Source: Macrostomum lignano (Eukaryota). Taken from it: 64,000 nucleotides of DNA. Positions 1,251-49,910 of the stretch are shown in pieces. Each line of letters opens with the position of its first letter. Positions within the stretch are counted from its first letter, which is position 1. The stretch lies in NCBI GenBank assembly GCA_002269645.1, contig NIVC01003260.1:44781-108780 (forward strand). Direction: 5' to 3'. The notes under the pieces were generated by a model that did no database searches, was not told the origin of the DNA, and worked only from the letters and a program-made list of their open reading frames with translations. The translations under genes were made by a program, and so were the position numbers.

Positions 1251-2074
1251 ACGCTCATGCACTTTGAGCTACCCTCGTTTCTGAGTCATTCCCACCTTCA
1301 TCCTACTCTCTTAGTTCACCCTTCTCTTTTGTCACAAGCCGTCTTTATCTGTGCCTCTATCAACTTTTCATCATACCTAGCAAAGCATTTCACGTTGACG
1401 TGGCAATATTCGACACCAAATGTAATAAAATCTCCGCTTTGAACAAGATTAAGTAATCATGAGCAACTTTCTCAGTCGAACCACCCCGTCAATCATTCAT
1501 TTTCGAGTATTCTCAAGAATCTGTCGCAAAATAACTTGGAAAACATGACTTTCTACTGAAACAATACAACAAGTAGTATAAGAAGGACTCGTGCAGAGAC
1601 GCAGCGCATTGCTATAGCAGCCCCGCTTATATCAGTGGCCACTGCAGCCCAGCTTTTAAGTGAGCTACTCTCTGCTACTTGGCGACTGACTCAGTGAACG
1701 CAGAGCAGAAATATTTTTGTTATTTTCTCTGCTTCAACCCCCCGCCCAGTGATAGCCAGGCAGTGCAGCTCGCACAGCTGCTGAGCAGGGTCAGAGCCTC
1801 ATCTCTCAGGCACAATGGCAAAGGCAGAAAATGCAACGATACACGTGAGGCTCCATGCTCGTGTCAGGCTTGGAATGCTCAAGTCTAAACAGCTCAATGT
1901 AGACTCGCATTCGCACACCATGTAGGGTAGGGCAGAACTGAGCACTGCTGCCTCTATTAAACCTGGATATTTGCTTGCGGAGACTTCTTATTCACCGAGT
2001 TAGACGGCCATTCTGAGGTTATTCAATTCTCTGAGAATAATATTTTTATTTCGCTCAGCAAATATCTATAGCTC

Positions 2075-4404
2075 ATGCTCAAAGACGCCATTAGATATGA
2101 TGCAGCGGGGAAGCTGCGACGACATACTGGAATGCTCCTGGCGCTTCTGGTGCTGCTGGCCAGCCTCGGCTGCGCTGCCGGGAGGCCCAGCCGGCTGCAT
2201 GAGGATGACTTTGACAGTCCAGATGATGAATCAGGTATGCAATGCATGAAGTGCCGCCGGGAGGTGAGATCTGGTGGCTGGAGTAGAGCTAGAACTTTTG
2301 AGATCTCATTAATGTAGTGAGACTACTGTGAGATCTCATTGATTAAGCGAGGCTACTGTAAGATCTCACTAATGCAGTGAGACTACTGTGAGATCTCACC
2401 AATGGAGTGAGACTATTTTGAGATCTCACTAATGCAGTGAGACTACTGTGAGATCTCATTGATCAAGCGAGACTACTGTGAGATCTCACTAATGCAGTGA
2501 GACTACTGTAAGATCTCACTAATGCAGTGAGACTACTGTGAGATCTCACTAATGTAATGAGACTACTGTGAGATCTCATTAATGCAGTGAGACTACTGTG
2601 AGATCTTACTAATGCAGTGAGCCTACTGTGAGATCTCACTAATGGAGTGAGACTAATGTGAGATCTCCCTGATGCAGTGAGACTACTTTGAGATTTCACT
2701 GATGATGTTAAACTACTGTGAGATCTCACTGATGAAGTGAGACTACTGTGAGATCTCACTAATGTAGTGAGACTACTTTGAGATTTCACTGATGAAATGA
2801 GACTACTTTGAGATCTCCCTGATGCAGTGAGTGTACTGTGAGGTCTTACTAATGCAGTGAGACTACTTTGAGATTTCACTCATGATGTGAAACTACTGTG
2901 AGATCTTGCTAATGATATGAGACTAGTGTGAGATCTCATTAATCGAGTGAGACTGCTGTGAGATCTCACTAATGCAGTGAGACAACTGTGAGATCTCACT
3001 AATGCAGTGAGACTACTGTTAGATCTCACTAATGTAGTGAGACTACTGTAAGATCTCACTAGTGCAGTGAGACTACTGTAAGATCTCACTGATGAAGTGA
3101 GACTACTGTGAGATTTCACTGATGATGTGAAACTACTGTGAGATCTCACTGATGAAGTGAGACTACTGTGAGATCTTCCTAATGATATGAGACTAGTGTG
3201 AGATCTCATTAATCGAATTAGACTGCTGTGAGATCTCACTAATGCAGTGAGACTACTGTTAGATCTCAATAATGGAATGAGACTATTATGAGACAGCTTG
3301 TATTAGATGATTCAGATTTTGTGGACACAAACAGATTAGGAAAATCAATTGAGACGCTAATCCAAAAGTCCGTGTCTGACGCCCCAAAGTCTCAGGCTGG
3401 GCTCGCGGCCTAGCTGACCGGCTGAGAGCATCCAGCGGTGAGGCCTTTGATTCCGACGATGCCTCCGAAGAAGAGCCCGAGCTGCAAGTCGAGGCCACGA
3501 AGCGGTCATGGATCGCCGAGCTGACAGAGAAGGTGGACCGCACCGAGGAGGCCGCAGACCTCATCGAGGAGATTCAGTCGCGCACTAGCAGCAGCGGATT
3601 GCGCAGCCTGAAGTCCGCCTGCAAGGCGATGTGCCCGAAGTGCGTCTGCGGCGTCATCCTGTTGCCCGGCCTGCCCAAAAATTCAAAAGCCGGAAAGCCA
3701 AAAGCCGGAAAGCCAAAGGCCGGAAAGCCAAATGCCGGAAAGCCAAAGGCCGGAAAGCCAAAGGCTGGAAAGCCAAAGGCCGGAAAGCCAAAGGCCGGAA
3801 AGCCAAAAGCCGGAAAGCCAAAGGCCGGAAAGCCAAAGGCCGGAAAGCCAAAGGCCGGAAAGCCAAAAGCCGGAAAGCCAAAAGCCGGAAAGCCAAAGCC
3901 CAGAAAGCCAAAAGCCGGAAAGTCAAAGGCTGGAAAGCCAAAGGCCGGAAAATCAAAAGCTGGAAAGCCAAAGGCTGGAAAGCCAAAAGCTGGAAAGCCA
4001 AAGGCCGGAAAGCCAAAGGCCGGAAAGCCAAAGAAGGCCGGAAAGCCGGAAAAGGCCGGAAAGCCGAAGAAGGCCGGAAAGCCGGAAAAGGCCGGAAAGC
4101 CGAAGAAGGCCGGAAAGCCGGAAAAGGCCGGAAAGCCGGAAAAATCTAAGAAGCCTGTAAGTTTTTGTTTGGAATATCTCTTCATAAAAGCCGTAATTTC
4201 CTCTAACCTTAATCTCTTATCTTGCTCGTTCACAATTTGAAGCCCTCGAAGAAGTCGCTTCAGTTTTCCGCTCTGGAGAGCCAACTGCCCGACTTTCTGC
4301 TTGACGAGGGCGGCGACGAAGCGGTTTTCAAACGGAAGGTCGGCGATCACGATCCGCTGTCTGACGAGTCCGAGGAGATGCTCAGCAGCTTCGGTGTGGA
4401 ATGA
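2075..4404 (+). CDS. Secreted precursor protein with Lys-rich (KAGKP)n repeat; exons 2075-2234, 3396-4156, 4243-4404 (about 360 aa)
   Basis: Hydrophobic signal MLLALLVLLASLGCAAG (ATG 2132, or upstream ATG 2075). Donor G|GTATGC at 2235 and acceptor CTCAG| at 3395 are phase-1 compatible. Donor |GTAAGT at 4157 and acceptor TTTGAAG| at 4242 are phase 0. The protein has acidic pro-segments, a KR site, CKAMCPKCVC and about 30 KAGKP-type repeats; stop TGA at 4402-4404. Confidence 0.8.
2305..3295. repeat. 30-bp intronic minisatellite (GACTACTGTGAGATCTCACTAATGCAGTGA)n
   Basis: About 33 visible copies filling intron 1 of the 2075-4404 gene. Confidence 0.95.
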
Positions 4405-4444
4405 GGATCGGTGTTCGGGTACAGGAGAGATGTTTTTGCTAGAG

Positions 4445-4470
4445 TTAGGGTTAGGGTTAGGGTTAGGGTT
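4445..4470 (+). repeat. Short interstitial telomeric tract (TTAGGG)4
   Basis: TTAGGGTTAGGGTTAGGGTTAGGGTT about 40 nt after the stop codon at 4404. Confidence 0.9.
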
Positions 4471-4899
4471 GCATCTGCGGATGTAAAAGGTCAGCAAAGA
4501 AATATATTGAATATAGATCTACCGAGGAATACTATAATACTAAATTAACAAGCGAGTTAGATTATAAAGAAGTTTCTTCTGAAGGAGTATTTCTATAAAG
4601 AAAGTATAAAAGCTTTCTCGATTATTTTTTAAAAATTTGAACACCTATTCCGAACTACCAAAGCTGAAGCGAACCCAATGCTTACATTTTTCAAGTTCAA
4701 TATTGAATTCAACAGCTAACCTGTTTCATTCCATGTTCATTTAAATAAATTCGAAGCCAGTGCTTGACAACAAGTCAAGTCCACTCTTTTCGGCATGATT
4801 GTTCAATATTTAATGATAACCCCTGATAAAGTCACACAAAAATCACCACCGGTCGTTCTTTACCTCTACATTGAGTCTTGCAGTGGTCTATGACTGCGC

Positions 4900-7484
<2,585 letters not shown>

Positions 7485-7650: not shown

Positions 7651-9412
7651 ATGCGTAACAAAAGCATTGAGAGCTTGCAAAAGAATCTTCCTGACTGGAA
7701 GCCAAGCAACTCTGCTTGGAGAAGCAGAGGAAGTATCAATAAATTATTAATTGAAGATTTGCAGCACAGCGGTATCCAGCCAGTTGCTGCTATTAAAGCA
7801 ATGCTATTAAAGACTCGGAAATACAGCGCGTTCGACTTTCGAGCCGAGTCGCTCAGTCAGCTCCGTTCGCGCCGGCGGGCCGTCCCTGCCAGTCACGACA
7901 GCCGATCGGACAGCCGAGGAGGCGGCGGCGGTGGACGGCCGGGTCAGCTCGCGCTGGTATTGGAGGAGGAGGAACCGCAGCAGACTGTAGAGAAACCTGC
8001 GCCTATCAGAAAGGTGCAGTTTTCCCAAGGAGGATGAGACTACTTGATTTGTCCCCATCCTGACTATCCCACTTCCTATAGGGATAGCCAGGAGACCGAG
8101 TTGGATAGCCAGGAGACCGAGTTGGATAGTCAGGAGAGGGAGTGGGATAGTCAGGAGACCGAGTGGGATAGTCAGGATAGGGAGTGGGATAGTCAGGATA
8201 GGGAGTGGGATAGTCAGGATAGGGAGTAGGATAGTCAGGAGAGGGAGTGGGATAGTCAGGAGAGGGAGTGGGATAGTCAGGATAGGGAGTGGGATAGTCA
8301 GAATAGGGAGTGGGATAGTCAGGATAGGGAGTAGGATAGTCAGGATAGGGAGTAGGATAGTCAGGAGAGGGAGAGGGATAGTCAGGAGAGGGAATGGGAT
8401 AGTCAGGAGAGGGAGTGGGATAGTCAGGATAGGGAGTAGGATAGTCAGGAGAGGGAGAGGGATAGTCAGGAGAGGGAGTGGGATAGTCAGGATAGGGAGT
8501 GGGATAGTCAGAATAGGGAGTGGGATAGTCAGGATAGGGAGTGGGATAGTCAGGATAGGGAGTGGGATAGTCAGGAGACCGAGTGGGATAGTCAGGATAG
8601 GGAGTGGGATAGTCAGGAGAGGGAGTGGGATAGTCAGTAGAGGGAGTGGGATAGTCAGGAGACCGAGTGGGATAGTCAGGATAGGGAGTGGGATAGTCAG
8701 GATAGGGAGTGGGATAGTCAGAATAGGGAGTGGGATAGTCAGGAGAGGGAGTGGGATAGTCAGGATAGGGAGTGGGATAGTCAGGAGAGGGAATGGGATA
8801 GTCAGGATAGGGAGTGGGATAGTCAGGATAGGGAGTGGGATAGTCAGGAGAGGGAGTGGGATAGTCAGGAGAGGGAGTGGGATAGTCAGGATAGGGAGTG
8901 GGATAGCCAGGACAGGGATTGGGATTATGGTATAGCAAAATGTACCATATTACATTGTAAATGTACTTTCGGCTCAGCACATACACTTCATGTCAGGTGG
9001 ACACTATCAGTAAGTACTCAAGTCCAGTCCTTGATCCCCGCAGCGGCGAGTCTCATTCATCATGCCGCACTCTGGTGACGTGATTCAAGTGCAGCAGAAG
9101 CAGTTCAACTCGTGGGGCACACAGACTGCTGAGTACAACAGCATCTCTAATGCGGTGATGTCCGAGGCGTATTACGTGAGCGCCATGAGCGCTCTGCAGC
9201 AGCGCCTGCAGATGTACCAGCTGATGGCCCAGGATGTGGCTGATCACATGAGGCGCCGTCAGCAGCTGCACCGGCTTAGGCGCGAGCGGCAACAGTTGGA
9301 GAGCACGTGGCGCAATGTGTTTACTATTATTAGCTTTGTGACGTCATTATGTATGCTATTTTTAGCATTGCGAATTTCTGTTGGTTTGGCGTTAGAAGTA
9401 CTGCTGGACTGA
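7651..9412 (+). CDS. Hypothetical protein, about 243 aa, with RVxF motif, coiled-coil-like segment and C-terminal hydrophobic helix; exons 7651-8013, 9044-9412
   Basis: Donor AAG|GTGCAG at 8014 and acceptor CCCCGCAG| at 9043, both phase 0, give PIRK|RRVSFIMPH. Exon 2 has GC3-rich codons. The C-terminus is NVFTIISFVTSLCMLFLALRISVGLALEVLLD*. AATAAA at 9803. The start codon is uncertain (7651 or 7801). Confidence 0.6.
8080..8915. repeat. 21-bp intronic minisatellite (GGGATAGTCAGGAKAGGGAGT)n
   Basis: About 40 visible copies. The YPTPSPD ORF on the - strand is an artefact. Confidence 0.96.
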
Positions 9413-9834
9413 GTTTTGATTAATTGTGCTCGATGTTCGTATTCTCATCACATTAAGTTCTACAGTTAATGCAAACTGCCTAAAGCACATAATACTTAAT
9501 TTGTTGCCTTCCTTCCTTCCCACAGAATTACATAAGCTTCAGTTGTCAAAGAACCAAGGCTTTAGCGCAGAAGTCCCTCAGAAACGGCTAGTACTAGCAA
9601 TCCAGTGACCTAGTGCCCCCCTTTGGGGCGGCCAATAAGCAAGGAGCAAATCCATTATTCACGCAAATCCATTAAAAAGGGAACATTTTCCTAAGAACCG
9701 ATTCCTTCTTCATTTTCATAAATCACCTTATTCGAGTAAAATTGTCGCGGAAACAGATGTTTGCTGTGAATCTCTTTTGTCTAAAAGTAAAAAAAGACAA
9801 CAAATAAAGCCTTAAAAAAGATAGCACGCGTTCC

Positions 9835-10313
9835 CCCCCCCAGATAGCAAGCACCCCCCAGATAGCAAACATCCCCCAAATAGCAAGCATCCCCCCCAGA
9901 TAGCAAGCATCCCCCAGATAGCAAGCATCCCCCAGATAGCAAGCATCCCCAAATACCTGTAGCAAGCACCCCCCCCCCAGATAGCAAGCATCCCCCAAAT
10001 ACCTGTAGCAAGCACACCCCCCCAGATAGCAAGCATCCCCCAGATAGCAAGCATCCCCCAGATAGCAAGCATCCCCAGATAGCAAGCATCCCCCAGATAG
10101 CAAGCATCCCCCAGATAGCAAGCATCCCCCAGATAGCAAACATCCCCCAGATAGCAAGCATCCCCCAGATAGCAAACATCCCCCAAATAGCAAGCATCCC
10201 CCAGATAGCAAGCATCCCCCAGATAGCAAGCATCCCCCAGATAGCAAGCATCCCCCAGATAGCAAGCATCCCCCAGATAGCAAGCATCCCCCAGATAGCA
10301 AGCATCCCCCAGA
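9835..10313. repeat. 18-bp minisatellite (AGATAGCAAGCATCCCCC)n
   Basis: Directly visible between the 7651-9412 and 10568 genes. Confidence 0.95.
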
Positions 10314-10567
10314 TGGAAAGTATTGATAGTTAGTGTAGTAATTCCAATCTCAGCTAGACGCTAGTGCAATACTTGAGAGCCAAAGCTTCAATTTAGGCTC
10401 GTCAATGAGCAGTGAACGCACGAAGCTATGGTTATTCTATGGTCGGAACCCGAACTGAGAGCCGCATCATCAAGCTGCAGTTTGGCCACCGCAATCAACT
10501 GAGCTAGCTAGGATAAAAGACAAAAGCTTCCCATAAAGCAGTTTTGACAAAGGCAACAAACCAAAGC

Positions 10568-12522
10568 ATGAACCTGCAATCCGAGGAAGCGCTAGCCGAC
10601 CGACTAAAAAACTGGGAGGAGCAGCGGCAGCGGCGCGCTGACCAGAGCGCCACCATTGTGAGGCCGAGCGGATTTATCGGCAACCTGCTGGACGCCAACA
10701 TGAGCTTTCTGTACAAAATTCCCTCCTATGTATTTGGCCCGTTTCCCCTCTACACAATGGGCCTGGTGAGCAGGCACAATTTCTTTCTGGTTGGCCTAAC
10801 TTTGCTGCTGATGAAGCTGGGTCTCCTGATTGCCCTGGCTGTCTATCTGAACATGCCGTCTGCTGCTAAGCGAGCCAGAATGCACCCGTGGGCGTACACG
10901 CCGAAGGAGACCGCCCAGCTGGACAGCATGCTGAATGATTGGCAGGGCTACGTGTTCAGCTTCAGGACTGGCCGGGTGATGTTCAGCTGCCAGCTGGCTC
11001 TGACGCTGCTGCTGACGCTGCTGACGGCCTACGCTCTCACGGGGAAGGTGCCGCGACTGCGGATGCTTCGGATGTCCAAACTGGCCAAGTTTACCAACTT
11101 TGTCAGCCTGCTTGTCAGCCTGTTCCACATCCTGCAGGTGAGGCATCAGGCAATGGGCAGTTCCACATCCTGCAGGTGAGGCATCAGGCAATGGGCAGTT
11201 CCACATCCTGCAGGTGAGGCATCAGGCAATGGGCAGTTCCACATCCTGCAGGTGAGGCATCAGGCAATGGGCAGTTCCACATCCTGCAGGTGAGGCATCA
11301 GGCAATGGGCAGTTCCACATCCTGCAGGTGAGGCATCAGGAAATGGGCATAGGCATTTCCACATCCAGCAGGTGAGGCATCAGGCAATGGGCATGGGCAG
11401 TTCCACATCCTGCAGGTGAGGCATCAGGCAATGGGCAGTTCCACATCCTGCAGGTGAGGCATCAGGCAATGGGCAGTTCCACATCCTGCAGGTGAGGCAT
11501 CAGGCAATGGGCAGTTCCACATCCTGCAGGTGAGGCATCAGGCAATGGGCAGTTCCACATCCAGCAGGTGAGGTATCAGGCAATAGGCATGGGCAGTTCC
11601 ACATCCTGCAGGTGAGGTATCAGGCAATAGGCATGGGCAGTTCCACATCCTGCAGGTGAGGCATCAGGCAATGGGCATGGGCAGTTCCACACCCAGCAGG
11701 TGAGGCATCAGGCAATGGGCATGGGCAGTTCCACATCCTGCAGGTGAGGCCACAGGCAATGGGCAGTTCCACATCCTGCAGGTGAGGCATCAGGCAATGG
11801 GCATGGGCAGTTCCACATCCTGCAGGTGAGGCATCAGGCAATGGGCAGCAAGGCCGGTAAAATTGCAAATTTCCCCATTATTTTCCCTTTATCCCCGCGA
11901 CGCCCGCGCAGATGCTGCTGCCGGCGCCATTCATAGCCCAGCTGGCCAAGCTGAAGCTGCTGGAGCTGCAGTCTGCCGGGCTGGTCAATACCACCCAGCT
12001 AAACTTGAAGATATTCTACGATAACAAGGCCAAACACTCGGGATCTTCTCACAAGCCATTCTATCCCAGCTTCATGGACAAGGTGCACTTCAACGAGAAG
12101 TGCTGCGGCGTGCGCTCCGCCGACGACTGGATGGAGTTCTCGGCCGAACTGGCCATCTACGCCGAGTTCCTGGCCGAGCGGCCCGGCCAGCTGCCGCCGA
12201 GGTTCCGCAGCCACCCGCCGCTCAGCTGCTACGATCCCAGCACGCATCGGCCGAACAAAAACTCCTGCGCTCCGTCGATTGCATCCAGATACCTGGCTAA
12301 TCAAGACGAGCTCCTGCCGCTAAGCATGATAGCCATACTCAGCATTGTGGCCGCCTTCTACCTGCAGCGAGCCTACACAGCTCAGGACGGCTTGGCCGGC
12401 CTCGACCCCAAGGCCATCCGGCTGGCTGGCGACGTCGCCTCAGCGAGCGGCCTGACTGGCGGCTCCGCGGTGACCGACCGGCAGATTGACACCACCGTGC
12501 CGCTGGTCTCCGTGCCCACCAG
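10568..12522 (+). CDS. Tetraspanin-like module (peripherin/ROM1-like large loop); exons 10568-11137 and 11912-12522
   Basis: Four hydrophobic helices (FFLVGLTLLLMKLGLLIALAVYL; VMFSCQLALTLLLTLLTAYAL; FTNFVSLLVSLFHILQMLLPAPF; LLPLSMIAILSIVAAFYL). The loop between TM3 and TM4 has MDKVHFNEKCCGVRSADDW (CCG at 12101-12109), PLSC and a final Cys. Phase-0 splice CAG|GTGAGG at 11138 to GCAG| at 11911. Confidence 0.8.
11123..11848 (+). repeat. 38/44-bp minisatellite made from the exon end plus 5' splice site (TTCCACATCCTGCAG|GTGAGGCATCAGGCAATGGGCAG)n
   Basis: About 18 copies. The first copy overlaps the true exon 1 end (FHILQ|). Confidence 0.95.
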
Positions 12523-12577
12523 GTGGGTTGGCTGTTGATAGCCAGCTGCCAGAGTCCCCAGACTGAAGCTGGAGACT

Positions 12578-12710
12578 GTTGGTGCTGCAGGGCAGACAGT
12601 GGGTGCTGCAGGGCAGACAGTGGGTGCTGCAGGGCAGACAGTGGGTGCTGCAGGGCAGACAGTGGGCACTGCAGGGCAGACAGTGGGTGCTGCGGGGCAG
12701 ACAGTGGGCA
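12578..12710. repeat. 21-bp minisatellite (GGGTGCTGCAGGGCAGACAGT)n in the tetraspanin/DC-STAMP junction intron
   Basis: About 6 copies. Confidence 0.9.
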
Positions 12711-12801
12711 CTTACAAGAGACACCCAGGCAAGAGACTGGGTGCCAGTGTGAGGGCTGCACCGCATCAAAACCCAATTCTCACTGCACACTCCCTTGGCA
12801 G

Positions 12802-19114
<6,313 letters not shown>

Positions 19115-21022: not shown

Positions 21023-21056
21023 TTAGGGTTAGGGTTAGGGTTAGGCTTAGGGTTAG
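21023..21056 (+). repeat. Short interstitial telomeric tract (TTAGGG)~5
   Basis: TTAGGGTTAGGGTTAGGGTTAGGCTTAGGGTTAG downstream of MTHFR. Confidence 0.9.
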
Positions 21057-21298: not shown

Positions 21299-24086
21299 TC
21301 AAACTAAGGCGCCCTGCTGCGACTGAGTGGTCAGGACTTGCTCCACCACCGACCAGAGGCAGTTCTCGGCCGGGAACTCGTTGTCCACCAGAGTGACCAG
21401 CAGGTAGTCTTCGGCGATGCCCTGGATGATCCGCCGGCTGTCGGAGCCCTCCGGGTACAGATTGGCCCACTCCTGCGTCCACAGGCCGAACGCTTCGTCC
21501 TTCCAGGCCATAAAGGCGCCATTATCGCACACGGTTGGCTGGATGATCTCCGAGGCGGGGAAGACGCCCCAGGTGAGCGCGATTGGTTCCTGCTGGCTGA
21601 AGTTCAGCCGGTTCACCGTGCCCTCCCGGTTCACAATCTGGTAGTTGACCCGGGGACTGAAGCGGTCCAGAACTTGCTGGAATGTTGCGGGGATGGCAGT
21701 TTATAAGAGAATGTCATATGGAGTAGGGTTCATCATTAATATTTTCACACAAATTGCACACCCTGAAGGCCCGAAGTGTCTTTCCACGCAATAAATAAAT
21801 ATTTCCTCCAACAAAGAGCCATTGGATCATACTAAGACAAATCTCGCTAGTAAAATAGTTTGTGTATGGGGCATTGGGCACTGCTGTAAATCAAGGCGAC
21901 AGTGGACTCTCAGCCAGCGAGAAGGATACGTTCTAATCGTCGGGCATGTACACTCTCTGCGCACTGAGGGTTGGCCCCAGGCCGATTTCCGTACATATAC
22001 AGCAAAAAATAATGTAATTAGCATTGAGCCAATTGGAATTTTAACTCACCTCAAGCGCGGCAAGAAACTGGCCGGGCAGGAAGAACTCCAGGTAGGCCTT
22101 CTGATAGACGTATCCGCCCGGTCCGCCCACCCGTAGGTTGAGTCTCCGCTAGGCAGGCCGTTGACATTCGGCTGCGAGTTGATGGTGAGCACGCCGCGGC
22201 TATTGAGCGCGACCAGCTGGTCGCGAATGGCGCGGCTCTCCTGCTGAAGCTCCTCGTCGCTCCAGGGCAGCCGAGTGACGCGGAAGCCATTGGCGTTGGG
22301 CTCACCGGATACAAAATTGACGAACACCCGCCAGACGTCTCTCTCGCTGGCCAGCTGTTCGCCCCACATGTTTAGCCGGTCCTTCTTGGTAGCGCGAACT
22401 GGTTTTATTGAGGTGTCAGACATTCAACTTTTCTTATTCGTGATTAGGGTCCTAGACACTCGATACAGGGCCAGAGTTTGTGTCTAAGTTCCTAGATACA
22501 GGATCGGAGCTTTGTCTAGGGTCCTAGATCCAGGGTCGGAGCTTGTGTCTAGGGTCCTAGATCCAGGGTCGGAGCTTGTGTCTAGGGTAATATCAATAGA
22601 TCCAGGGTCGGAGCTTGTGTCTAGGGTAATATCAATAGATCCAGGGTCGGAGCTTGTGTCTAGGGTAATATCAATAGATCCAGGGTCGGAGCTTGTGTCT
22701 AGGGTAATACGAGTATCAATAGATCCAGGGTCGGAGCTTGTGTCTAGGGTCCTAGATTCAGGGTCGGAGCTTGTGTCTAGGGTCCTAATTCCAGAGTCAG
22801 AGCTCCAAGTTACAAGCCAAGACGCAAAGGCTGCGAGTCCGACACACGCCGACTCACCGGTAAGATAGAACAGGTAATAGTCCTTGAGCTCGCCAAAAGC
22901 AGGCGCATCTGGCCGCCCCAGCGACCATTAGGAAATTCTTCCCAATGCAGAGTCCTGTGCACGTAGCTGGTTGGCCGGTTGGACCAGAAAACCGGCCGGA
23001 CGAGTTCGCCGCACCGCTCGTGATTCGCCGAGTGTTTCCATGGCAACGGCCTGGGCAGGTCCTCGTGCCAAAGACCGATATTGCGCAAAATTTCAATTGT
23101 GGCCACTTCGCGGTTAAGCGTGTAAAAGTGAATACCTGCAAAGGTGAGTGGTAATTGAATAATCAGTTTGAGCTCTTGTAGTTGTACTAGCTCAGGAGTC
23201 GGCAAACTCCGGCCCGCTCAAGGTTTGTGTCTCTTCTCCAAGGTTTTGACTTGAGCATTTCGTATTTTCGATGGACTTTACTAACGGTAGAAGTATCAGA
23301 AAGTTTCAAGTAAGAAATGAATTAAGTAATAATTGAGATTCATACATGCGCAACCTCCAAAATTCGGTCGGCCATGCGACTTAGTTTTAACAAAAATGCG
23401 ACGTAGTTTTTGGCCAAAAATGCGACTTACACATCAAAAAACTCTAAAGCAAAATAAACGCAACTTTGGGTAAACGGCAGGAGTAACTATAACTGTCTTA
23501 TTAAGCCAAAATGCCTCGTCAGCTACTTAGTACTACTACTTAGGTAAATTTTTGGGTGGGTATTTTTGCGACTTCCTTGGTTGGCCGCCAAATCGGTCGG
23601 CCGAATCGGCCGACTCGGCCGACTGTTGCGCATGTATGTTGAGATTCATCGTCTGCACAAATTGTATCCAAATGGAAGCAAATTCAAAATCAAAGACTGA
23701 CCGCCCGGAAGAAAAATGGGGCAGCCTCAGCAAACAATTTCATTCAGTTCCATTTAGCAGCTCACCGTGAACTTCGCCGCTCTCCAGAAGCTTCCGGCAG
23801 AGCTGCGTGCACTGGAAAATGCCGTAATTTCGAATAGCCTCGTCGTTCTCCTTGATCGGCTCGATCGTGCGGATGATCTCGTCAGGCACGGCCAGCTTGG
23901 ACAGCTTCACAATGTGGCGCAGCGACTGGTAGGCCTGGATTGGCAGCACGCCAGGAATGATTGGGCACCGGATTCCCAGCTGCCGGCAGTCGGATTGGAA
24001 CTTAAGAAAAGTGTCGGCTTCGAAGAAAAGCTGCGTTATGATGAAGTCGGCTCCAGCGTCCACCTGCCATGGTTAGATAGATAGAT

Positions 24087-24176
<90 letters not shown>

Positions 24177-24223
24177 ATAGATAGACAGATAGATAGACAG
24201 ATAGATAGATAGATAGATAGATG

Positions 24224-24297
<74 letters not shown>

Positions 24298-24339
24298 CAG
24301 ATAGACAGATAGATAGATAGATAGATAGATTGATAGATT

Positions 24340-24370
<31 letters not shown>

Positions 24371-24371
24371 G

Positions 24372-24445
<74 letters not shown>

Positions 24446-24479
24446 CAGATAGACAGATAGATAGATAGATTGATAGATT

Positions 24480-24510
<31 letters not shown>

Positions 24511-26119
24511 GGATACAAACAGGGAGATCAGAGTAACATGGGAGAGTATGAGAAACCGAAGAGATAGGAGACGCAAGAGAGCAAGACAAGTCAATAAAGC
24601 ACTTCAAGGCCATTCTGTCCTGTTTACCCCTTTCTGACCCTGAGCGCCTTAAAAAAGCTGTTATCTAATCAGGGCTGAAATGTCTAATAATAACCCACTA
24701 AGGGACACGCGGCTCCGATTGTCAGTCTGCCAAGAGCTTTTAAGTTGGAAACCCCCGCTGGTGGAGCCCCTCGCCTTGGGTATTCCCCGTTTCTCACACA
24801 GAGCGAGCGGGTGGAATTTTCCATTGCCGTTATGTCTTAACTTTTGTTTATGAGAGCTTTGACGAAGCATTAATTAACGAGACTTAGATCGTTTGATAGG
24901 CGCCGCTCCTGCTTCAGTGGGCGCCACTACTGTCCCCTGATGCTTCAGTGGGCGCCACTACTGTCCCCTGATGCTTCAGTGGGCGCCACTACTGTCCCCT
25001 GATGCTTCAGTGGGCGCCACTACTGTCCCCTGATGCTTCAGTGGGCGCCGCTACTGTCCCCTGATGCTTCAGTGGGCGCCGCTACTGTCCCCTGATGCTT
25101 CAGTGAGCGCCGCTACTGTCCCCTGATGCTTCAGTGGGCGCCACTACTGTCCCCTGATGCTTCAGTGGGCGCCACTACTGTCCCCTGATGCTTCAGTGGG
25201 CGCCACTACTGTCCCCTGATGCTTCAGTGGGCGCCACTACTGTCCCCTGATGCTTCAGTGGGCGCCGCTACTGTCCCCTGATGCTTCAGTGAGCGCCGCT
25301 ACTGTCCCCTGATGCCTCAGTGGGCGCCGCTATCAAACCCGATGCTTACACAAGTACTTCTTCCAGGGAAAAGCTTTTGACGAGATTGCGGGTTCTCACC
25401 TTCTCCTTGAGCCTGAGCAAGTCATCAGCATAGCTGGACGCCTCAGGATGTCCGGTCGGATAGCCGGCCACGCAGATGTTAAAGAAACTGCCGTAGCGCT
25501 TCCGGATAAAGCGAACCAAATCTACAGCGTACTTGAAGTCGCCAAGCAGGTCACCATTGCTGACGTCGCCGCTGCCTCCGGCTCCGTCCTCGGGCGCTTC
25601 GGGCAGGTCGCCGCGCAATGCCAGAATATTTTTCAGGCCGAGGCCTTTGGCCCTCTCCAGCGCAGCGGTCATTCGCTCCTCCGGCAAGCCAACGCAGGTC
25701 ACGTGTAGCATAGTGTCGATGCCGCTGTAGTTGAGCATGGCGGAGGCCACCATGATTGAAGAGGTCGGCGCATCACTCATCGGATTGCCGGCCGGATGCC
25801 AGGTGACGTCGCAGAACAGCGGGCGACCCTTGGCAAATCTGTCAAACTTGGACAGGAGGTTGACGGCTCCGCTAGCCGTTCGGGGCGGAAAGAATTCGCA
25901 AGAGAACCAGCGCTTGCCCTTCTCGATGCGTCGATTAATCCGGCTGATCAACGGCCGGTACTGGGCAATGGGCAGTACCGGCGAGTGTGGCCGGCTATCG
26001 TGGCAATCGTTCATTTCAGTTGCATTGCTGGCACTACTGGAACTGTCGCCGCTGGAGACGCGGCACAGAATTTTTGGAGCATCGGACTCATAGGCGTGAC
26101 CATTCTGTTGGGACTCCAT
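21299..26119 (-). CDS. MTHFR: Methylenetetrahydrofolate reductase; coding exons 26119-25400, 24063-23766, 23135-22858, 22398-22050, 21676-21299 (about 674 aa after correcting two 1-bp deletions)
   Basis: Catalytic motifs [60 protein letters not shown] and IIPGVLPIQ. Regulatory-domain motifs [51 protein letters not shown] and [19 protein letters not shown] phases are consistent except for 1-nt shortfalls in exons 3 and 4. Confidence 0.97.
22440..22800. repeat. 33/39-bp minisatellite (TAGATCCAGGGTCGGAGCTTGTGTCTAGGG...)n in MTHFR intron 3
   Basis: About 9 visible copies. Confidence 0.92.
23193..23240. mobile_element. Solo terminal fragment of a hAT-Charlie-like MITE
   Basis: CAGGAGTCGGCAAACTCCGGCCCGCTCAAGGTTTGTGTCTCTTCTC resembles the reverse complement of the right end of the 29862-30549 element. 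No partner TIR was found. Confidence 0.6.
23341..23638. mobile_element. Non-autonomous hAT-type MITE in MTHFR intron 2
   Basis: Perfect 14-bp TIR CATACATGCGCAAC...GTTGCGCATGTATG. 8-bp direct repeat TTGAGATT at 23333-23340 and 23639-23646. Confidence 0.9.
24074..24512. repeat. (GATA)n microsatellite in MTHFR intron 1
   Basis: Directly visible; it ends about 10 nt from the exon 2 acceptor. Confidence 0.98.
24897..25332. repeat. 31-bp minisatellite (GGGCGCCACTACTGTCCCCTGATGCTTCAGT)n in MTHFR intron 1
   Basis: About 14 nearly identical copies. Confidence 0.96.
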
Positions 26120-26141
26120 TGCGTCTGGCCCTCTAAGAGAC

Positions 26142-26374
26142 CTAAACAAGAAGCTGCGCTACTGACCCGAGTATTGCTTTAAGGATAACAAGGACAATTG
26201 GATCAGGGGGCGCGCTTACACAGACAGCTGGAAGGAGTGGGGTGGTTGTTGATCTAGGGTACGAGCGTGTGTGTGGATATAAAGCCCTCCCTATGCAAGC
26301 GAGATAGTGAAGAGGAGGCGAGAATAGCTGAGGCAGACGAGACCCTGACAGGGCAAAACCTGCCTTCTTTTATA
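26142..26374 (-). promoter_or_regulatory. Putative MTHFR core promoter and 5' UTR: TATAAAAG, non-coding exon, 78-nt UTR intron
   Basis: Minus-strand TATAAAAG at 26374-26367, donor |GTAAGC at 26219, and acceptor TTCTTGTTTAG| at 26142, 22 nt before the ATG. Confidence 0.55.
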
Positions 26375-41086: not shown

Positions 41087-42140
41087 TGTAGTGAGCCGCT
41101 AGTTTATGGTTAGGCGTCGCCCTTGTCAGCTGTTCCCTCGCCTTCGCCCTGGGTTGCTGTCTGCCGCTGGTCAGCTTCCCGCCCCTCCCTTTCGTCTGTC
41201 TGCTGCTGCCCTTGGCCTGTTCTGGCCTTTTGCGTCTTTGTTCTCAGCCCTTAGCTTCTCTGCTGTGGGCTGTCTCTGTTTCGTTCCCATCCCGTTTTCC
41301 TCTGTCATGTGAGCAAGTCACATGACAGACTCTGCGTTCTTCAAGTCCTAAAGTGCAGTAAACATGTTTACTGCACTCGTTGGCCCTGTTTACCTGGTGA
41401 GTCACGTGCTTTCGGACCCCTCCCTCTCTAAGGAGAGGAGTGACTCATGTTGCTAAAAATAGCAACTGAGTCACAGCCGCGTGTACTCTGGCCGGGGACC
41501 TCAAGTGACGTCAGTTCTAAAAATAGAACAAGTCACGAGGTCTTCCGCACGCTTCTACCCTGCCCAAGACTCTCGAGTGACGTCAGTTCTAAAAATAGAA
41601 CAAGTCACGAGGTCTTCTGCGTGGGTGTTTCCCGGCTATAAATAGGAGCCCTCTCCCCCTTGTTTCCGTCAAGGAGTCTGTTCTGTGTCTAGTTCTGTGC
41701 TAGTCTTGTTCTTCCGTGTGATTACGTCCCGAGTGTCTGAGTCTCTGCATACATTGAGTCTGTTCGTATTGGTCTGACTGAGACCCGACTAAAGCGCCAC
41801 AAGCCTACGAGAGACTAACTCAGCCCTCCCTCTGCCATCCAAGCCCGGCAGGTACGGCTGACGAGACGCCTAGTACGTTGAACTGCAAATCTGCACTAGG
41901 TGCTGTGTTCGTTGACTTCGTTATTTCGTTCCGACGGGAAGCTCACCTCACGGAAGGCTGAGACCTGAAGGAACTGGTGGCAGCACTACCTACGCTACTA
42001 AAGTTAAGAAGGCTTCTAAGTGAGAGGACGGAGCCCAAGTCACTGCGCTGTACAGCAGGACAACCACAGGTACAACACTGGTGGCAGCGGTGGGATTCAA
42101 AGACCTACCAGGCCACCCCGAGAAAGCCCCAAGTACAACA
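41087..42140 (+). repeat. 5' LTR (1054 bp)
   Basis: Begins TGTAGTGAGCCG and ends GTACAACA. It has an internal ~75-bp direct duplication (41500-41620) and TATAAATA at about 41637. Confidence 0.95.
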
Positions 42141-42161
42141 CTGGTGACGCAGCGGTGGGAT
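42079..42161 (+). promoter_or_regulatory. tRNA-Leu primer-binding sites: perfect copy inside the LTR (42079-42096) and imperfect copy after the LTR (42142-42161)
   Basis: TGGTGGCAGCGGTGGGAT is the complement of a tRNA-Leu 3' end (ATCCCACCGCTGCCA-CCA, recalled). The downstream copy TGGTGACGCAGCGGTGGGAT has a 2-nt insertion. Confidence 0.8.
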
Positions 42162-42232
42162 CCGACTACGACACACCCAAGCCAACCGCTCTTTCGAGAA
42201 CGACATCGGCCAGTAACTACTACGAGTTCAAC

Positions 42233-43407
42233 ATGTTCAACGAACGAGACGAGAGCCGGTGCAGCAGCCGGCTGGATCAGCACATCAGCAGTTCGAGGCC
42301 TGCGGCAGCGGACGCCGCAGCAGCAGCAGCGATCAACGACCTTGGTCAGCAGCCGACGCCGAGGCGAGGTGCGAGAAGCGACGTGTCCGATGACCCGCCA
42401 GACGAGCTTCTGCAAGGCCTGGACAACATTGGCCGGAACATCACGCACCAGGACGTGAGGACCATGATGGCAGCTCTGCAGCAGCAGATGGAGCGGCCCG
42501 TGAGTAAACAAGTTAAAATTGTGAAGTTTACTCCAAGTCAGGACATTCATGTCTGGCTTGCCGCGTTCGAGCAGCGTTGCGAGATGGAGCGCATAGTCGA
42601 CCCGTTCGAGATGAAGCAACACCTCATCGCGAGTCTTGATTTGGCTACTGCATATCCTTCTTTGCTTAGTATGAATCTTCCGCGCTTCGCCAGCTACGAG
42701 GAGGTCAAGCAGCGTCTGATTGAGCGATTTGCCCGTCATGGTGGTGCTGATGAGTACAGAGAGCTGTTGAGGCGTCGTCAACAAGGCAAGAATGAGTCAG
42801 CAGAAGAGTTTGCTGACGCCCTGAGAACTCTGGGGTGAACGTGCGTATCCTCGGATGCACCCTGAAGACCGCGAGAAGGAGATTGCGGATCAATTTCTCG
42901 CTGGTATCCGGACGACGCCAGACTTGCGCGAACGGCTGTACTGGGTTCGCCCGAACAATCTTCTTGCTGCGATTCGAGAACTACGACGACTAGAAGGCGC
43001 TAAAGAATTGGCGCAGCGATCCGCTCAACCCCCCGGTTAGGATGTTGGACGGGGAGGAGGACGGCGACCCGAAACCCGACGTCACCGCCCAAGCCTTGCT
43101 GACTCTAACCGACTTGATTGAGAAGCAGCAGCGAATGCTGGATCACCTGGTGCAGCGTGACCAACAGCAGGTAGCCAGCCCGCCAAAGAGAGCTATAATC
43201 TGCTATAGCTGCGGACAGCCCGGTCATCTCAACACCCAGTGCCCGATGCGCCAGAACCAGGGAAATGGCCAGGCGGAGAGCGACAACGGCACCGCCCTCC
43301 GCGAGGTCCAAGCCCAGGCTACTTGGCAGACTCCGAGAGGTCACCAGAAGAAGAGGATGTCGGCTGTGCAGGCGCCAATGCCCAGTCCGACAGTCGCTCG
43401 CCAGTAA
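42233..43407 (+). pseudogene. Gag with CCHC zinc knuckle, interrupted by two +1 homopolymer insertions (42832-42835, 43029-43034)
   Basis: Capsid-like segment WLAAFEQRCEM...QQGKNESAEEFADALRTL, then CYSCGQPGHLNTQC. Removing one G and one C joins ORFs 42020, 42855 and 43042 into a single frame. Confidence 0.85.
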
Positions 43408-49400: not shown

Positions 49401-49910
49401 AGGGTAGAGGCCGCCTGCCAGACAGACGGCAACAATTCGGAGGCGACCACCCTGCAGGAGCTGGCCACCGAGCTGCAGCAGGCCTTGCCTACAAACAATG
49501 CTGTCCCTCCAGCACCGCCCAACTCGCCGGAGCCACGCGACCCGAACTCATCGGACAATGAGTCCGAGGACAACGGATTGTCGCCACCGGGCCTTTCGCC
49601 AGCTGTTCAAGCAGCCGTTAACCGATATATTGAGGCGGTGTACTTTATCGCCCAACAGCTGACTGCTGCCGCCCAATTGAACCGACTGCCAACCCTCGCG
49701 GACTGGCCGCGATGGGCCTGTCTCCGCGCCCTCACGGATGAGGATCGGCAGCGGCTAATGGACGAGGCTGCCCAGCTCACTGCACCAACACTCAGGCGTC
49801 CGCCATACCCTGAGATGGTCCGCGTTGTCGCCCGGCTAATTGTGGCCCAGATGGCGGGTCGGACACCGGAGGTCCCGGATCTCGTGCACCATTGCGACCG
49901 GCAAGAGTAA
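43260..49910 (+). pseudogene. Pol polyprotein (PR, RT, RNase H, integrase) with an in-frame TAG at 47043-47045 and a long C-terminal extension
   Basis: PR FLLDSGS; RT FSSLDLAQGFWQI-like and YMDDIVV; RH VLDTDAS, ELLAIV, DHRAL and NADALSR; IN HSSPLCGH...*CRTC, IHCDVVGP, IHTDQGTNF and NGQVENLN. ORFs 43239-47045 and 47121-49910 share a frame. Confidence 0.93.

What the first reader, a model, noticed from the sequence alone, without database searches (positions are those of the whole stretch)
2075..4404. Secreted prepro-protein with a ~160-aa polycationic (KAGKP)n core flanked by acidic pro-segments
Seen: signal peptide, acidic region (DDFDSPDDES...DSDDASEEEPE), a dibasic KR site, a 4-Cys cluster, about 23 KAGKP pentamers plus 6 (K/E)KAGKP hexamers, then an acidic tail with KRK. 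Unlike every other array in the window, this repeat has units of 15 or 18 nt, its variation is mostly synonymous (AAA/AAG, GCC/GCT, CCA/CCG), and it ends at a perfect GTAAGT donor, so it looks selected as protein. Inference: an H1-tail-like polycation neutralised by acidic propeptides and released by convertase cleavage. Possible roles are antimicrobial, adhesive/mucus or seminal-fluid protein; no homologue was recognised.
Basis: partly seen in the sequence, partly recalled or inferred. Interest (0 to 1): 0.7.

Follow-up and report, generated by a model that had tools for sequence, protein, structure and literature searches.

The report
Secreted lysine-rich repeat protein, flatworm orphan
This is a real three-exon gene of the flatworm Macrostomum lignano for a small secreted protein whose middle is a run of about 30 positively charged KAGKP units; it belongs to an undescribed two-gene family that most resembles the lysine-rich "glue" proteins flatworms use for adhesion, but its tissue and role are still untested.

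Summary
Window 2075-4404 (+) fits a three-exon gene: signal peptide, acidic stretch, conserved ~60-aa helical domain ending in an invariant C-x3-C-x2-C-x-C cluster, a 164-aa K/A/G/P core (23 pentamers, 6 hexamers, one terminal unit) and a conserved acidic tail.

The genome is Macrostomum lignano Mlig_3_7.

- **Coding evidence.** A related species' intronless transcript (P0001/L015) has the same architecture. Its conserved blocks give dN/dS 0.08. Its basic core is K/P-rich but not repetitive.
- **Family.** Only two genes exist genome-wide, each in homeologous copies. Paralogue B carries a 666-aa core that is 54% Lys, plus a KSGY/KSGH block. Nothing else matches in 1.84 billion representative proteins or Pfam.

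- The acidic flanks (-21) cannot neutralise the core (+63; about +355 in B).
- The KR site lies mid-helix and is absent in B.
- A period divisible by 3 is not unique in the window.

My best reading is a secreted polycationic cohesive or matrix component of a gland secretion that binds polyanions. It would be analogous, not homologous, to the K/R-rich regions of flatworm adhesion proteins ap1/ap3. Tissue, processing and function are inferred, and no M. lignano transcript data were reachable.

The parts
2052..2058 (+). Pyrimidine-rich stretch ending in CAG, 16 nt before the ATG. Possible spliced-leader trans-splice acceptor (inferred).
   Evidence: Sequence TTTTTATTTCGCTCAG|CAAATA. M. lignano trans-splice acceptors are enriched for [T/C]TNCAG (PMC8629364). 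No read data were available to confirm this.
2075..2234 (+). Exon 1 (CDS). Met1, signal peptide (residues 1-36, 2075-2182, predicted cleavage after CAAG) and the first acidic stretch DDFDSPDDES. Donor GTATGC at 2235, phase 1.
   Evidence: The same signal-peptide layout occurs in orthologue P0001 and paralogue B.
2235..3389 (+). Intron 1. It holds a 30-bp minisatellite (2299-3293, 33 copies) whose unit contains the palindrome GTGAGATCTCAC.
   Evidence: TRF and sequence. All + frames of the array carry 33 or more stops. The orthologous transcript has nothing corresponding.
3390..4156 (+). Exon 2. It encodes the acidic linker, the conserved domain and the polycationic repeat. An alternative in-frame acceptor lies at 3396.
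   Evidence: Phase-1 AG acceptors at 3388-3389 and 3394-3395. The orthologue aligns from W57 onwards. Homeologues L013 and L014 keep the frame.
3485..3661 (+). Conserved N-domain (Q86-L144): QVEATKRSWIAELTEK...IEEIQSRTSSSGLRSLKSACKAMCPKCVCGVIL. It contains KR at 3500-3505 and the C-x3-C-x2-C-x-C cluster at 3620-3649.
   Evidence: It differs from P0001 by about 5 non-synonymous changes over 59 codons. ACxAMCPKCVCGVIL is invariant in paralogue B. dN/dS is 0.077. AlphaFold2 predicts four short helices with pLDDT 84-90. There is no PDB fold match.
3677..4156 (+). Polycationic core. KNS is followed by a 15/18-nt array (3686-4156) encoding 23 pentamers, 6 hexamers and EKSKKP. With PSKK of exon 3 the core is 164 aa, 67 K+R and 4 D+E.
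   Evidence: The 30-nt double unit occurs only in the four copies of this gene in the 764-Mb genome and never in the control. Array length differs between homeologues (471, 441 and 450 nt), always in frame.
4157..4242 (+). Intron 2 (86 nt). GTAAGT donor and a pyrimidine-rich tract with AG acceptor, phase 0.
   Evidence: The junction is supported by the continuous orthologous transcript.
4243..4404 (+). Exon 3. PSKK, then the conserved acidic tail LESQLPDFLLDEGGDEAVFKRKVGDHDPLS..., and the TGA stop at 4402-4404.
   Evidence: The 30-aa block is conserved with P0001, dN/dS 0.081.
4440..4470 (+). (TTAGGG)5 interstitial telomere-type repeat in the presumed 3' UTR. The first AATAAA follows at 4744-4749.
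   Evidence: TRF. The repeat is also present in the homeologues (reverse-frame NPNPNP).

Best explanation
Window 2075-4404 is a functional three-exon gene of Macrostomum lignano. It encodes a protein of about 362 aa that enters the secretory pathway.

After signal-peptide removal the protein has four parts:
1. An acidic N-flank.
2. A small conserved helical domain ending in four invariant cysteines.
3. A 164-aa intrinsically disordered polycation (about 41% Lys, the rest Ala/Gly/Pro).
4. A conserved acidic tail.

It is one of two paralogous genes that form a family seen so far only in Macrostomum. The other gene has a 666-aa core that is 54% Lys, followed by a Lys/Ser/Gly/Tyr/His block.

Most likely mechanism (inferred): the protein is stored in gland-cell vesicles and released as a structural or cohesive component of a secretion, such as adhesive, egg cement or eggshell, or mucus. 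Its lysine array would bind polyanionic partners (sulphated or carboxylated glycans, glycocalyx) electrostatically and condense them. This is how the K/R-rich regions of flatworm adhesion proteins ap1/ap3 are thought to work. The Cys-bearing helical domain would serve in packing or disulphide-linked multimerisation. The acidic ends would act as short counter-charged blocks for solubility or self-association, not as neutralising propeptides.

Shown: gene structure, conservation, selection, composition, and family size and restriction. Inferred: secretion, lack of convertase processing, gland expression and polyanion binding.
For: - **Organism.** G000 has 764,410,778 bases in 5269 contigs, against 764,424,962 bases in 5270 scaffolds for Mlig_3_7. 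The exact 35-nt M. lignano spliced leader occurs 43 times and never in the control.
- **Gene model.** The splice phases agree. An intronless 923-nt transcript contig from another species encodes the same architecture end to end.
- **Selection.** dN/dS is 0.08 at dS 0.59 over 89 conserved codons.
- **The basic core is a conserved property.** In the orthologue it is 83 aa, 28 K and 21 P, with no DNA repeat. In paralogue B it is 666 aa with 357 K.
- **The array is gene-private.** It occurs only in this gene's copies. Three homeologues keep the frame at different unit numbers.
- **Signal peptides.** A signal-peptide layout with small -3/-1 residues is present in all three family members.
- **Precedent in the same animal group.** Mlig-ap1 has more than 3600 aa of K/R regions with pI above 14 that bind negatively charged sugars (PMC6410801). 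Stand-alone G/R/K-rich ap3 proteins exist in Minona, where RNAi removes the electron-dense vesicle core (PMC6745481), and in Theama, where K/R/G/H/S make up 87.7% of the protein (PMC9229212). Paralogue B's KSGY/KSGH block has that kind of composition.
Against: - No expression, localisation or protein data for this gene could be reached. The exact-protein lookup and the fragment search were both empty.
- As far as the paper's text shows, only ap1 and ap2 are reported as adhesive-gland proteins from the published tail-specific in situ screens in M. lignano. An adhesive-gland role is therefore not indicated by existing work.
- Gene A's core has no Tyr, His or Arg, unlike ap3-type and DOPA-type glues.
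- There is no sequence homology to any adhesion protein. Only the N-domain was searched exhaustively.
- The signal peptide was judged by eye, not by SignalP.
- One copy (contig C4062) is frameshifted.
Confidence: 0.5

Rival explanations
1. The protein is a charge-neutralised prepro-protein whose acidic propieces mask the polycation until a proprotein convertase cuts at KR (and at KRK in the tail). Cleavage would release a free H1-tail-like antimicrobial or DNA-binding polycation.
For: - The acidic-basic-acidic layout is conserved in the orthologue and in paralogue B.
- KR and FKR[K/E] are conserved between gene A and the orthologue.
- In the orthologue the flanks (-17) offset much of the core (+26).
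- Charge-balanced propeptides are known for defensins and eosinophil major basic protein (my own knowledge).
Against: - Net charge is about +42 in gene A, and paralogue B has a core of about +355, so neutralisation is impossible.
- KR sits mid-helix in the most conserved and best-predicted part of the N-domain.
- KR reads TKS in paralogue B.
- Cleavage at KR would leave the conserved Cys domain attached to the polycation, not free it.
- B's last exon has no equivalent of FKRK.
Confidence: 0.12
2. An eggshell or egg-cement precursor. The lysine arrays would supply nucleophiles for quinone (DOPA) tanning, or stick the egg to the substrate, as in the Lys/Tyr/His/Gly-rich eggshell proteins of parasitic flatworms and DOPA glues of mussels and tubeworms.
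For: - Paralogue B ends its core with 124 aa of KSGY/KSGH repeats (12 Tyr, 16 His, 28 Lys). This composition is typical of tanned or DOPA-based materials (my own knowledge).
- M. lignano has cement glands and shell granules (mentioned in PMC6410801 and PMC4490696).
- A tail tyrosinase accompanies ap3 in Theama.
Against: - Gene A, the finding itself, has only one Tyr, and it is in the signal-peptide n-region.
- No expression data are available.
- No tyrosinase or related gene was noticed in the window.
Confidence: 0.18
3. A prostate-derived seminal-fluid protein. It would be a rapidly evolving, lineage-restricted secreted protein transferred at mating.
For: - It is an orphan, genus-restricted, secreted-type protein with a fast-changing core between species (83 aa non-repetitive against 164 aa repetitive).
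- 76 prostate-limited transcripts are described in M. lignano, and about three-quarters of those analysed show evidence of secretion (PMC5977470).
Against: - The flanking domains are highly conserved (dN/dS 0.08), unlike typical fast-evolving seminal proteins.
- Nothing links this gene to the published Mlig-pro list. The supplements hold no sequences.
Confidence: 0.12
4. Not a functional coding repeat. On this view a minisatellite happens to lie in an open frame of a dead or mis-modelled gene.
For: - The array is open in 5 of 6 frames, and many other arrays in the window have periods divisible by 3.
- One copy (C4062) has a 1-nt deletion and a partial duplication.
Against: - The orthologous spliced transcript has a K/P-rich core in the same place and frame.
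- The flanks are under purifying selection.
- Three intact homeologues exist.
- Paralogue B has the same layout.
- The array is private to this gene.
Confidence: 0.03

Closest known systems
Flatworm adhesion protein 3 (Mile-ap3a/b of Minona ileanae, Tmed-ap3 of Theama mediterranea) and the K/R-rich regions A-C of Macrostomum lignano Mlig-ap1
   Same: - Secreted flatworm proteins, or protein regions, made almost wholly of low-complexity Lys-rich repeats with extreme positive charge.
- They exist as stand-alone genes in some flatworms.
- They are proposed to act by electrostatic binding to negatively charged glycans.
- They form the dense core of adhesive vesicles.
- Paralogue B's K/G/A/V and K/S/G/Y/H blocks resemble the 'GRKHS' composition.
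   Different: - Size is 362 aa (gene A) or about 1000 aa (B), against 3700 aa or more.
- Arginine is almost absent, and proline is abundant in gene A.
- A conserved helical four-Cys N-domain and acidic flanks are present, which the papers read here do not describe for ap3 or the Mlig-ap1 K/R regions.
- No sequence homology was shown.
- Adhesive-gland expression is unknown.
Linker histone H1 C-terminal tail
   Same: K/A/P-rich, intrinsically disordered, polyanion-binding composition (KAGKP against AKPKAAKPKK-type motifs; my own knowledge).
   Different: - There is no linker-histone globular domain (Pfam).
- A conserved signal peptide and a Cys cluster point to the secretory pathway, not the nucleus.
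Charge-balanced cationic propeptides (defensin precursors, eosinophil pro-major basic protein)
   Same: A signal peptide, acidic segments and a cationic segment in one precursor (my own knowledge).
   Different: - Charge is far from balanced (+42, or about +350 in B).
- The candidate dibasic site is not conserved in the family and lies inside a folded domain.
Polycationic cement proteins of the sandcastle worm (Pc-1, -2, -4, -5) and mussel foot proteins Mfp-3/-5
   Same: Small secreted Lys/Gly-rich repeat proteins that work with polyanions by complex coacervation. Paralogue B's KSGY/KSGH block is compositionally close (my own knowledge; reviews listed).
   Different: - Gene A lacks Tyr and His in the core, so DOPA chemistry is not possible there.
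- The taxa are unrelated and there is no homology.
Spidroin-type architecture (long repetitive core capped by small non-repetitive helical terminal domains)
   Same: A repeat core whose length varies between copies, flanked by short, strongly conserved terminal modules that could control storage and assembly. This is an analogy only.
   Different: No structural match. A spidroin N-terminal domain appears only at Foldseek E about 6. The chemistry also differs.

Membership tests
Flatworm ap3 / GRK-rich cohesive adhesion proteins | N-terminal signal peptide | tested here: met
   A hydrophobic core with small -3/-1 residues is present in gene A, orthologue P0001 and paralogue B. It was judged by eye; SignalP was not available.
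Flatworm ap3 / GRK-rich cohesive adhesion proteins | Bulk of the protein is a low-complexity Gly/Arg/Lys(-His-Ser) region | tested here: inconclusive
   The core is low-complexity and Lys-rich. Gene A has 67 K+R in 164 aa, and B has 357 K in 666 aa plus a K/S/G/Y/H block. Arg is nearly absent, however, and gene A is Ala/Pro-rich.
Flatworm ap3 / GRK-rich cohesive adhesion proteins | Expression in adhesive gland cells and presence in footprints | not testable with these tools
   No M. lignano transcript or proteome record could be reached. The supplements searched carry no matching sequence.
Flatworm ap3 / GRK-rich cohesive adhesion proteins | Sequence relatedness to the Mlig-ap1 K/R regions or Mile/Tmed-ap3 | not tested
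The Mlig-ap1 peptide was too short for the genome search. The N-domain has only one relative in 1.84 billion representatives.
Linker histone H1 | Winged-helix globular domain (Pfam linker_histone) | tested here: not met
   A Pfam scan of the whole model found only a sub-threshold FAM176 hit (E 0.17).
Linker histone H1 | Nuclear protein without a secretory signal | tested here: not met
   A signal-peptide-like N-terminus is conserved in all family members.
Charge-neutralised cationic prepropeptides cut by proprotein convertases | Anionic propiece roughly balances the cationic mature part | tested here: not met
   Flanks are -21 against a core of +63 in gene A. In B the N-part is -8 and the tail -4, against a core of +355.
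Charge-neutralised cationic prepropeptides cut by proprotein convertases | Conserved, exposed dibasic site at the propiece boundary | tested here: inconclusive
   KR is conserved in the orthologue but reads TKS in B. It lies mid-helix in the AlphaFold2 model, pLDDT about 86. Actual cleavage is not testable here.
DOPA/tanning-type glue or eggshell proteins | Tyr-rich (DOPA-forming) repeats together with Lys, Gly and His | tested here: not met
   Gene A's core has no Tyr or His. Only paralogue B meets this feature, in a 124-aa block.

The most novel reading that the evidence does not exclude
Genes A and B may be the free-standing lysine-rich proteins that Pjeta et al. (PMC6745481) postulated as a possible source of the K/R flanks of flatworm adhesion protein ap1. 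On this reading they act as self-complementary acid-base-acid block polyampholytes. The acidic ends of one chain would pair with the lysine core of others to give a self-coacervating network. The orphan helical four-Cys domain would work as a redox- or pH-controlled assembly switch. That would be a new, very small and easily engineered class of temporary-glue or secretion-matrix proteins.
Probability: 0.12. Interest if true: 0.65.

Novelty: new variant of a known kind. Interest (0 to 1): 0.42.

Why it matters
Macrostomum lignano is the main genetic model for reversible underwater adhesion, and its known glue relies on giant proteins with lysine/arginine-rich regions. This finding adds an undescribed, genus-restricted family of small secreted proteins. 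It has an extreme lysine core (up to 54% Lys over 666 aa in the paralogue), a new conserved Cys-bearing domain and acidic ends.

These genes are short enough to express recombinantly and can be knocked down by RNAi in this animal. They therefore give a tractable handle on how polycations are packed into vesicles and how they bind polyanions in seawater. If they turn out to be unrelated to adhesion (eggshell, cement, mucus or ejaculate), they are still a clean case of a coding minisatellite. The array expanded recently: 164 aa here against 83 aa of non-repetitive sequence in a related species, while the flanking domains stayed under strong constraint.

Tried and rejected
1. **First gene model.** An exon-2 acceptor at 3429 was dropped after alignment with the orthologous transcript. 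The acceptor is at 3390 or 3396.
2. **Homologue searches.** Pfam, the word-indexed search of 5.8 billion proteins and the exhaustive phmmer search of 1.84 billion representatives with the N-domain gave one relative only, P0001.
3. **M. lignano transcripts or proteins.** The exact-sequence lookup of the 362-aa model and a 157-aa N-terminal query for fragments both returned nothing.
4. **Structure.** An AlphaFold2 model of the N-domain was compared with the PDB. No match had E below 0.4.
5. **Literature.** Peptide and DNA strings of both genes and the two SRA run numbers occur in no held paper. They are also absent from the supplements of the prostate screen and the adhesion paper. The prostate paper's supplements hold no primers or sequences.
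7. **Rejected arguments.** An open frame, or a period divisible by 3, is not evidence of coding.
8. **Rejected reading.** The minus-strand 314-aa ORF 3574-4518 (FGFPA repeats) is the mirror image of the array, with no support.
Full report
**What is there**

The region 2075-4404 on the + strand fits a three-exon gene.

- **Exon 1 (2075-2234).** It starts at an ATG preceded by an in-frame TAG. It encodes MLKDAIRYDAAGKLRRHTG-MLLALLVLLASLGCAAG-RPSRLHEDDFDSPDDES. That is a positively charged n-region, an 11-12 residue hydrophobic core, small residues at -3/-1, and then an acidic stretch.
- **Intron 1 (2235-3389, GT...AG, phase 1).** Most of it is a 30-bp minisatellite that is full of stops in the + frames.
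- **Exon 2.** It begins at 3390, or at the in-frame alternative 3396, and runs to 4156. Intron 2 (4157-4242) begins at a GTAAGT donor.
- **Exon 3 (4243-4404).** It is joined in phase 0 and ends in TGA.

The product is about 362 aa.

**Organism**

- The window's assembly has 764,410,778 bases in 5269 contigs.
- The Macrostomum lignano assembly Mlig_3_7 is given as 764,424,962 bases in 5270 scaffolds (PMC5730564). The difference is about the size of a mitochondrial scaffold.
- The exact 35-nt M. lignano spliced leader, taken from PMC8629364, occurs 43 times in the assembly and never in the reversed control.

The animal is therefore this free-living marine flatworm. It is a recent polyploid, which explains why each gene below appears three or four times.

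**Is the repeat coding?**

- Eleven other arrays in the window also have periods divisible by three. Several of them, and five of the six frames of this array, are free of stops.
- Synonymous variants dominate by count (21 against 5). By distinct variable sites the score is 4 against 4, because unit duplication multiplies old variants.

The real evidence comes from relatives.

- **Orthologous transcript.** The only database relative is P0001, 277 aa. It is encoded without interruption on 923- and 908-nt contigs of two sequencing runs (L015, L016). These are contigs with no introns, so I read them as transcripts of another species. P0001 has the same order of parts: signal peptide; acidic stretch; a block that differs by about five non-synonymous changes over 59 codons (QVEATKRSWIAELTEK...ACKAMCPKCVCGVIL); a basic core; and a near-identical tail block (LESQLPDFLLDE.GDE.AFKR.VGDHDPLS).
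- **Purifying selection.** Over these 89 conserved codons dN/dS is 0.08 at dS 0.59.
- **A conserved basic core.** The orthologue's core is 83 aa with 28 Lys and 21 Pro, but it is not a DNA repeat. A K/P-rich polycation is therefore the conserved property. The KAGKP array is a recent expansion and homogenisation of it.
- **Homeologues.** Within M. lignano, two other intact copies (contigs C1937 and C2497) keep the frame with arrays of 441 and 450 nt, against 471 nt here. A fourth copy, on a 25-kb contig (C4062), has a partial duplication and a 1-nt deletion in an A run. It is either a pseudogene or an assembly error.
- **A gene-private array.** The 30-nt double unit occurs nowhere else in the 764-Mb genome.

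**A two-gene family**

Searching the genome with the N-domain of either gene finds only this gene and one paralogue, B. B is present in three copies, on C2194, C945 and C397.

B has four exons:

1. A signal peptide plus DDES.
2. An acidic exon.
3. A large exon that begins with the same domain (VVERTKSAWIEELLSK...ACQAMCPKCVCGVILL). This is followed by 666 aa of (KKGAKKAGKKVKKGAKK)-type repeats with 357 Lys, then 124 aa of KSGY/KSGH repeats and a His-rich stretch.
4. A short acidic last exon.

The motif A-C-x-A-M-C-P-K-C-V-C-G-V-I-L is invariant in all members. Pfam finds nothing. AlphaFold2, run on the four-sequence alignment, predicts four short helices with pLDDT 84-90 over residues 26-78 of the 96-residue query. 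The last three cysteines lie just after the helices. Foldseek against the PDB gives no match better than E 0.4. The domain is an orphan.

- **Charge bookkeeping.** After the signal peptide the N-part is -11, the core +63 and the tail -10. In the orthologue the values are -8, +26 and -9. Paralogue B has a core of about +355. The acidic parts therefore cannot neutralise the core.
- **The KR site.** K91-R92 lies in the middle of the first, well-predicted helix of the most conserved block. It reads TKS in paralogue B. Cleavage there would leave the Cys domain on the polycation, not free it. Convertase release is thus possible for gene A but is not a family feature and is not favoured.
- **The H1 resemblance.** It is compositional only. 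There is no linker-histone domain, and a signal peptide is conserved.

**Most likely function (inference)**

The closest known kind is in the same animal group.

[quoted passage not shown] These regions bind negatively charged sugars, and adhesion is blocked by heparin (PMC6410801).
- In Minona ileanae and Theama mediterranea the equivalent regions are a separate secreted protein, ap3. In Minona its knock-down removes the electron-dense core of the adhesive vesicles (PMC6745481). In Theama K, R, G, H and S make up 87.7% of the protein (PMC9229212).
- Pjeta et al. suggested that ap1 may have gained its flanks by fusion with an independent K/R-rich protein.

Genes A and B are stand-alone secreted polycations in M. 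lignano, and B's composition is close to the ap3 type. I therefore propose that gene A is a polycationic cohesive or matrix component of a gland secretion. It would be stored with, and act on, polyanionic partners by electrostatic condensation. The Cys domain would serve packing or disulphide linkage, and the acidic ends would act as short counter-charged blocks.

Which gland is involved is unknown. Adhesive glands, cement glands or eggshell, mucus or rhabdites, and the prostate all remain possible. The paper's text reports only ap1 and ap2 as adhesive-gland proteins from the published tail screens, so an adhesive-gland role is not indicated by existing work. Gene A's core also lacks Tyr, His and Arg.

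**Limits**

No M. lignano transcript or protein record for this gene could be reached. No paper or supplement holds its sequence. SignalP and ProP were not available, so secretion, processing and tissue are inferred. The species behind P0001 is unknown.

**Verdict**

A secreted, selected polycation with acidic flanks is correct. Neutralisation and convertase release are not supported.
- It is a new variant of a known kind: a lysine-rich low-complexity secretory protein of flatworms, with an orphan conserved domain.
- It is of moderate interest, mainly as a small, testable addition to the bioadhesion toolkit of this model animal.

Noticed in passing
window 2299-3293: Intron 1 holds 33 copies of a 30-bp unit (TGAGATCTCACTAATGCAGTGAGACTACTG) that contains the 12-bp palindrome GTGAGATCTCAC. 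Intron 1 of paralogue B also carries a minisatellite of a different unit (L009, about 2010-2350). Intron length differs between homeologues.
   Followed up: partly
window 4440-4470, 21023-21056, 56761-56808, 59790-59823: Short interstitial telomere-type arrays, (TTAGGG)5-8 or the complement CTAACC. The first lies just after the stop codon of the gene and is kept in the homeologous copies.
   Followed up: no
window 4899-7484: A 2.6-kb (CTGT)n microsatellite of about 650 copies lies directly downstream of the gene. The window as a whole is unusually dense in mini- and microsatellites (82 TRF rows).
   Followed up: no
G000:C4062:22410-25338 (L001/L012): A fourth copy of the gene sits at the end of a 25-kb contig. 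It has a partial duplication of the N-domain region (89% identical) and a 1-nt deletion in an A run inside the array, but is otherwise like the C1937 copy. It is either a pseudogene or an assembly artefact.
   Followed up: partly
L009 (G000:C2194:58000-67999) 1809-6276; also L010, L011: Paralogue B is a protein of about 1000 aa. It has a 666-aa core that is 54% Lys and a 124-aa KSGY/KSGH block. It may be a more striking glue or eggshell candidate than the gene in the window.
   Followed up: partly
window 9035-17000 (+): A multi-exon gene with a DC-STAMP-like domain (PF07782, E 2e-07 in ORF 16184-16999) lies here. Its introns appear to carry several minisatellites (18-, 38-, 21-, 23- and 14-bp units).
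   Followed up: partly
window 21299-26158 (-): A methylenetetrahydrofolate reductase gene in at least four exons. The catalytic domain is at 25346-26158 and 23740-24072, and the SAM-binding regulatory domain at 22046-22423 and 21299-21700. Minisatellites and a (TAGA)n array lie between the exons.
   Followed up: partly
window 42020-49910 (+): An LTR-retrotransposon-type element with long open frames. Pfam hits are reverse transcriptase, RNase H, the integrase zinc-binding domain and the integrase core. I described it only and did not analyse it further.
   Followed up: partly
window 56800-64000: A repeated block structure recurs at about 56.9, 59.9 and 62.1 kb. Each block is an array of a 30-bp unit (TTCAGTTTCACGGAGAGGATTTCGATGGTG) followed by long AG-rich tracts, and each is preceded by CTAACC repeats at two of the sites.
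   Followed up: no
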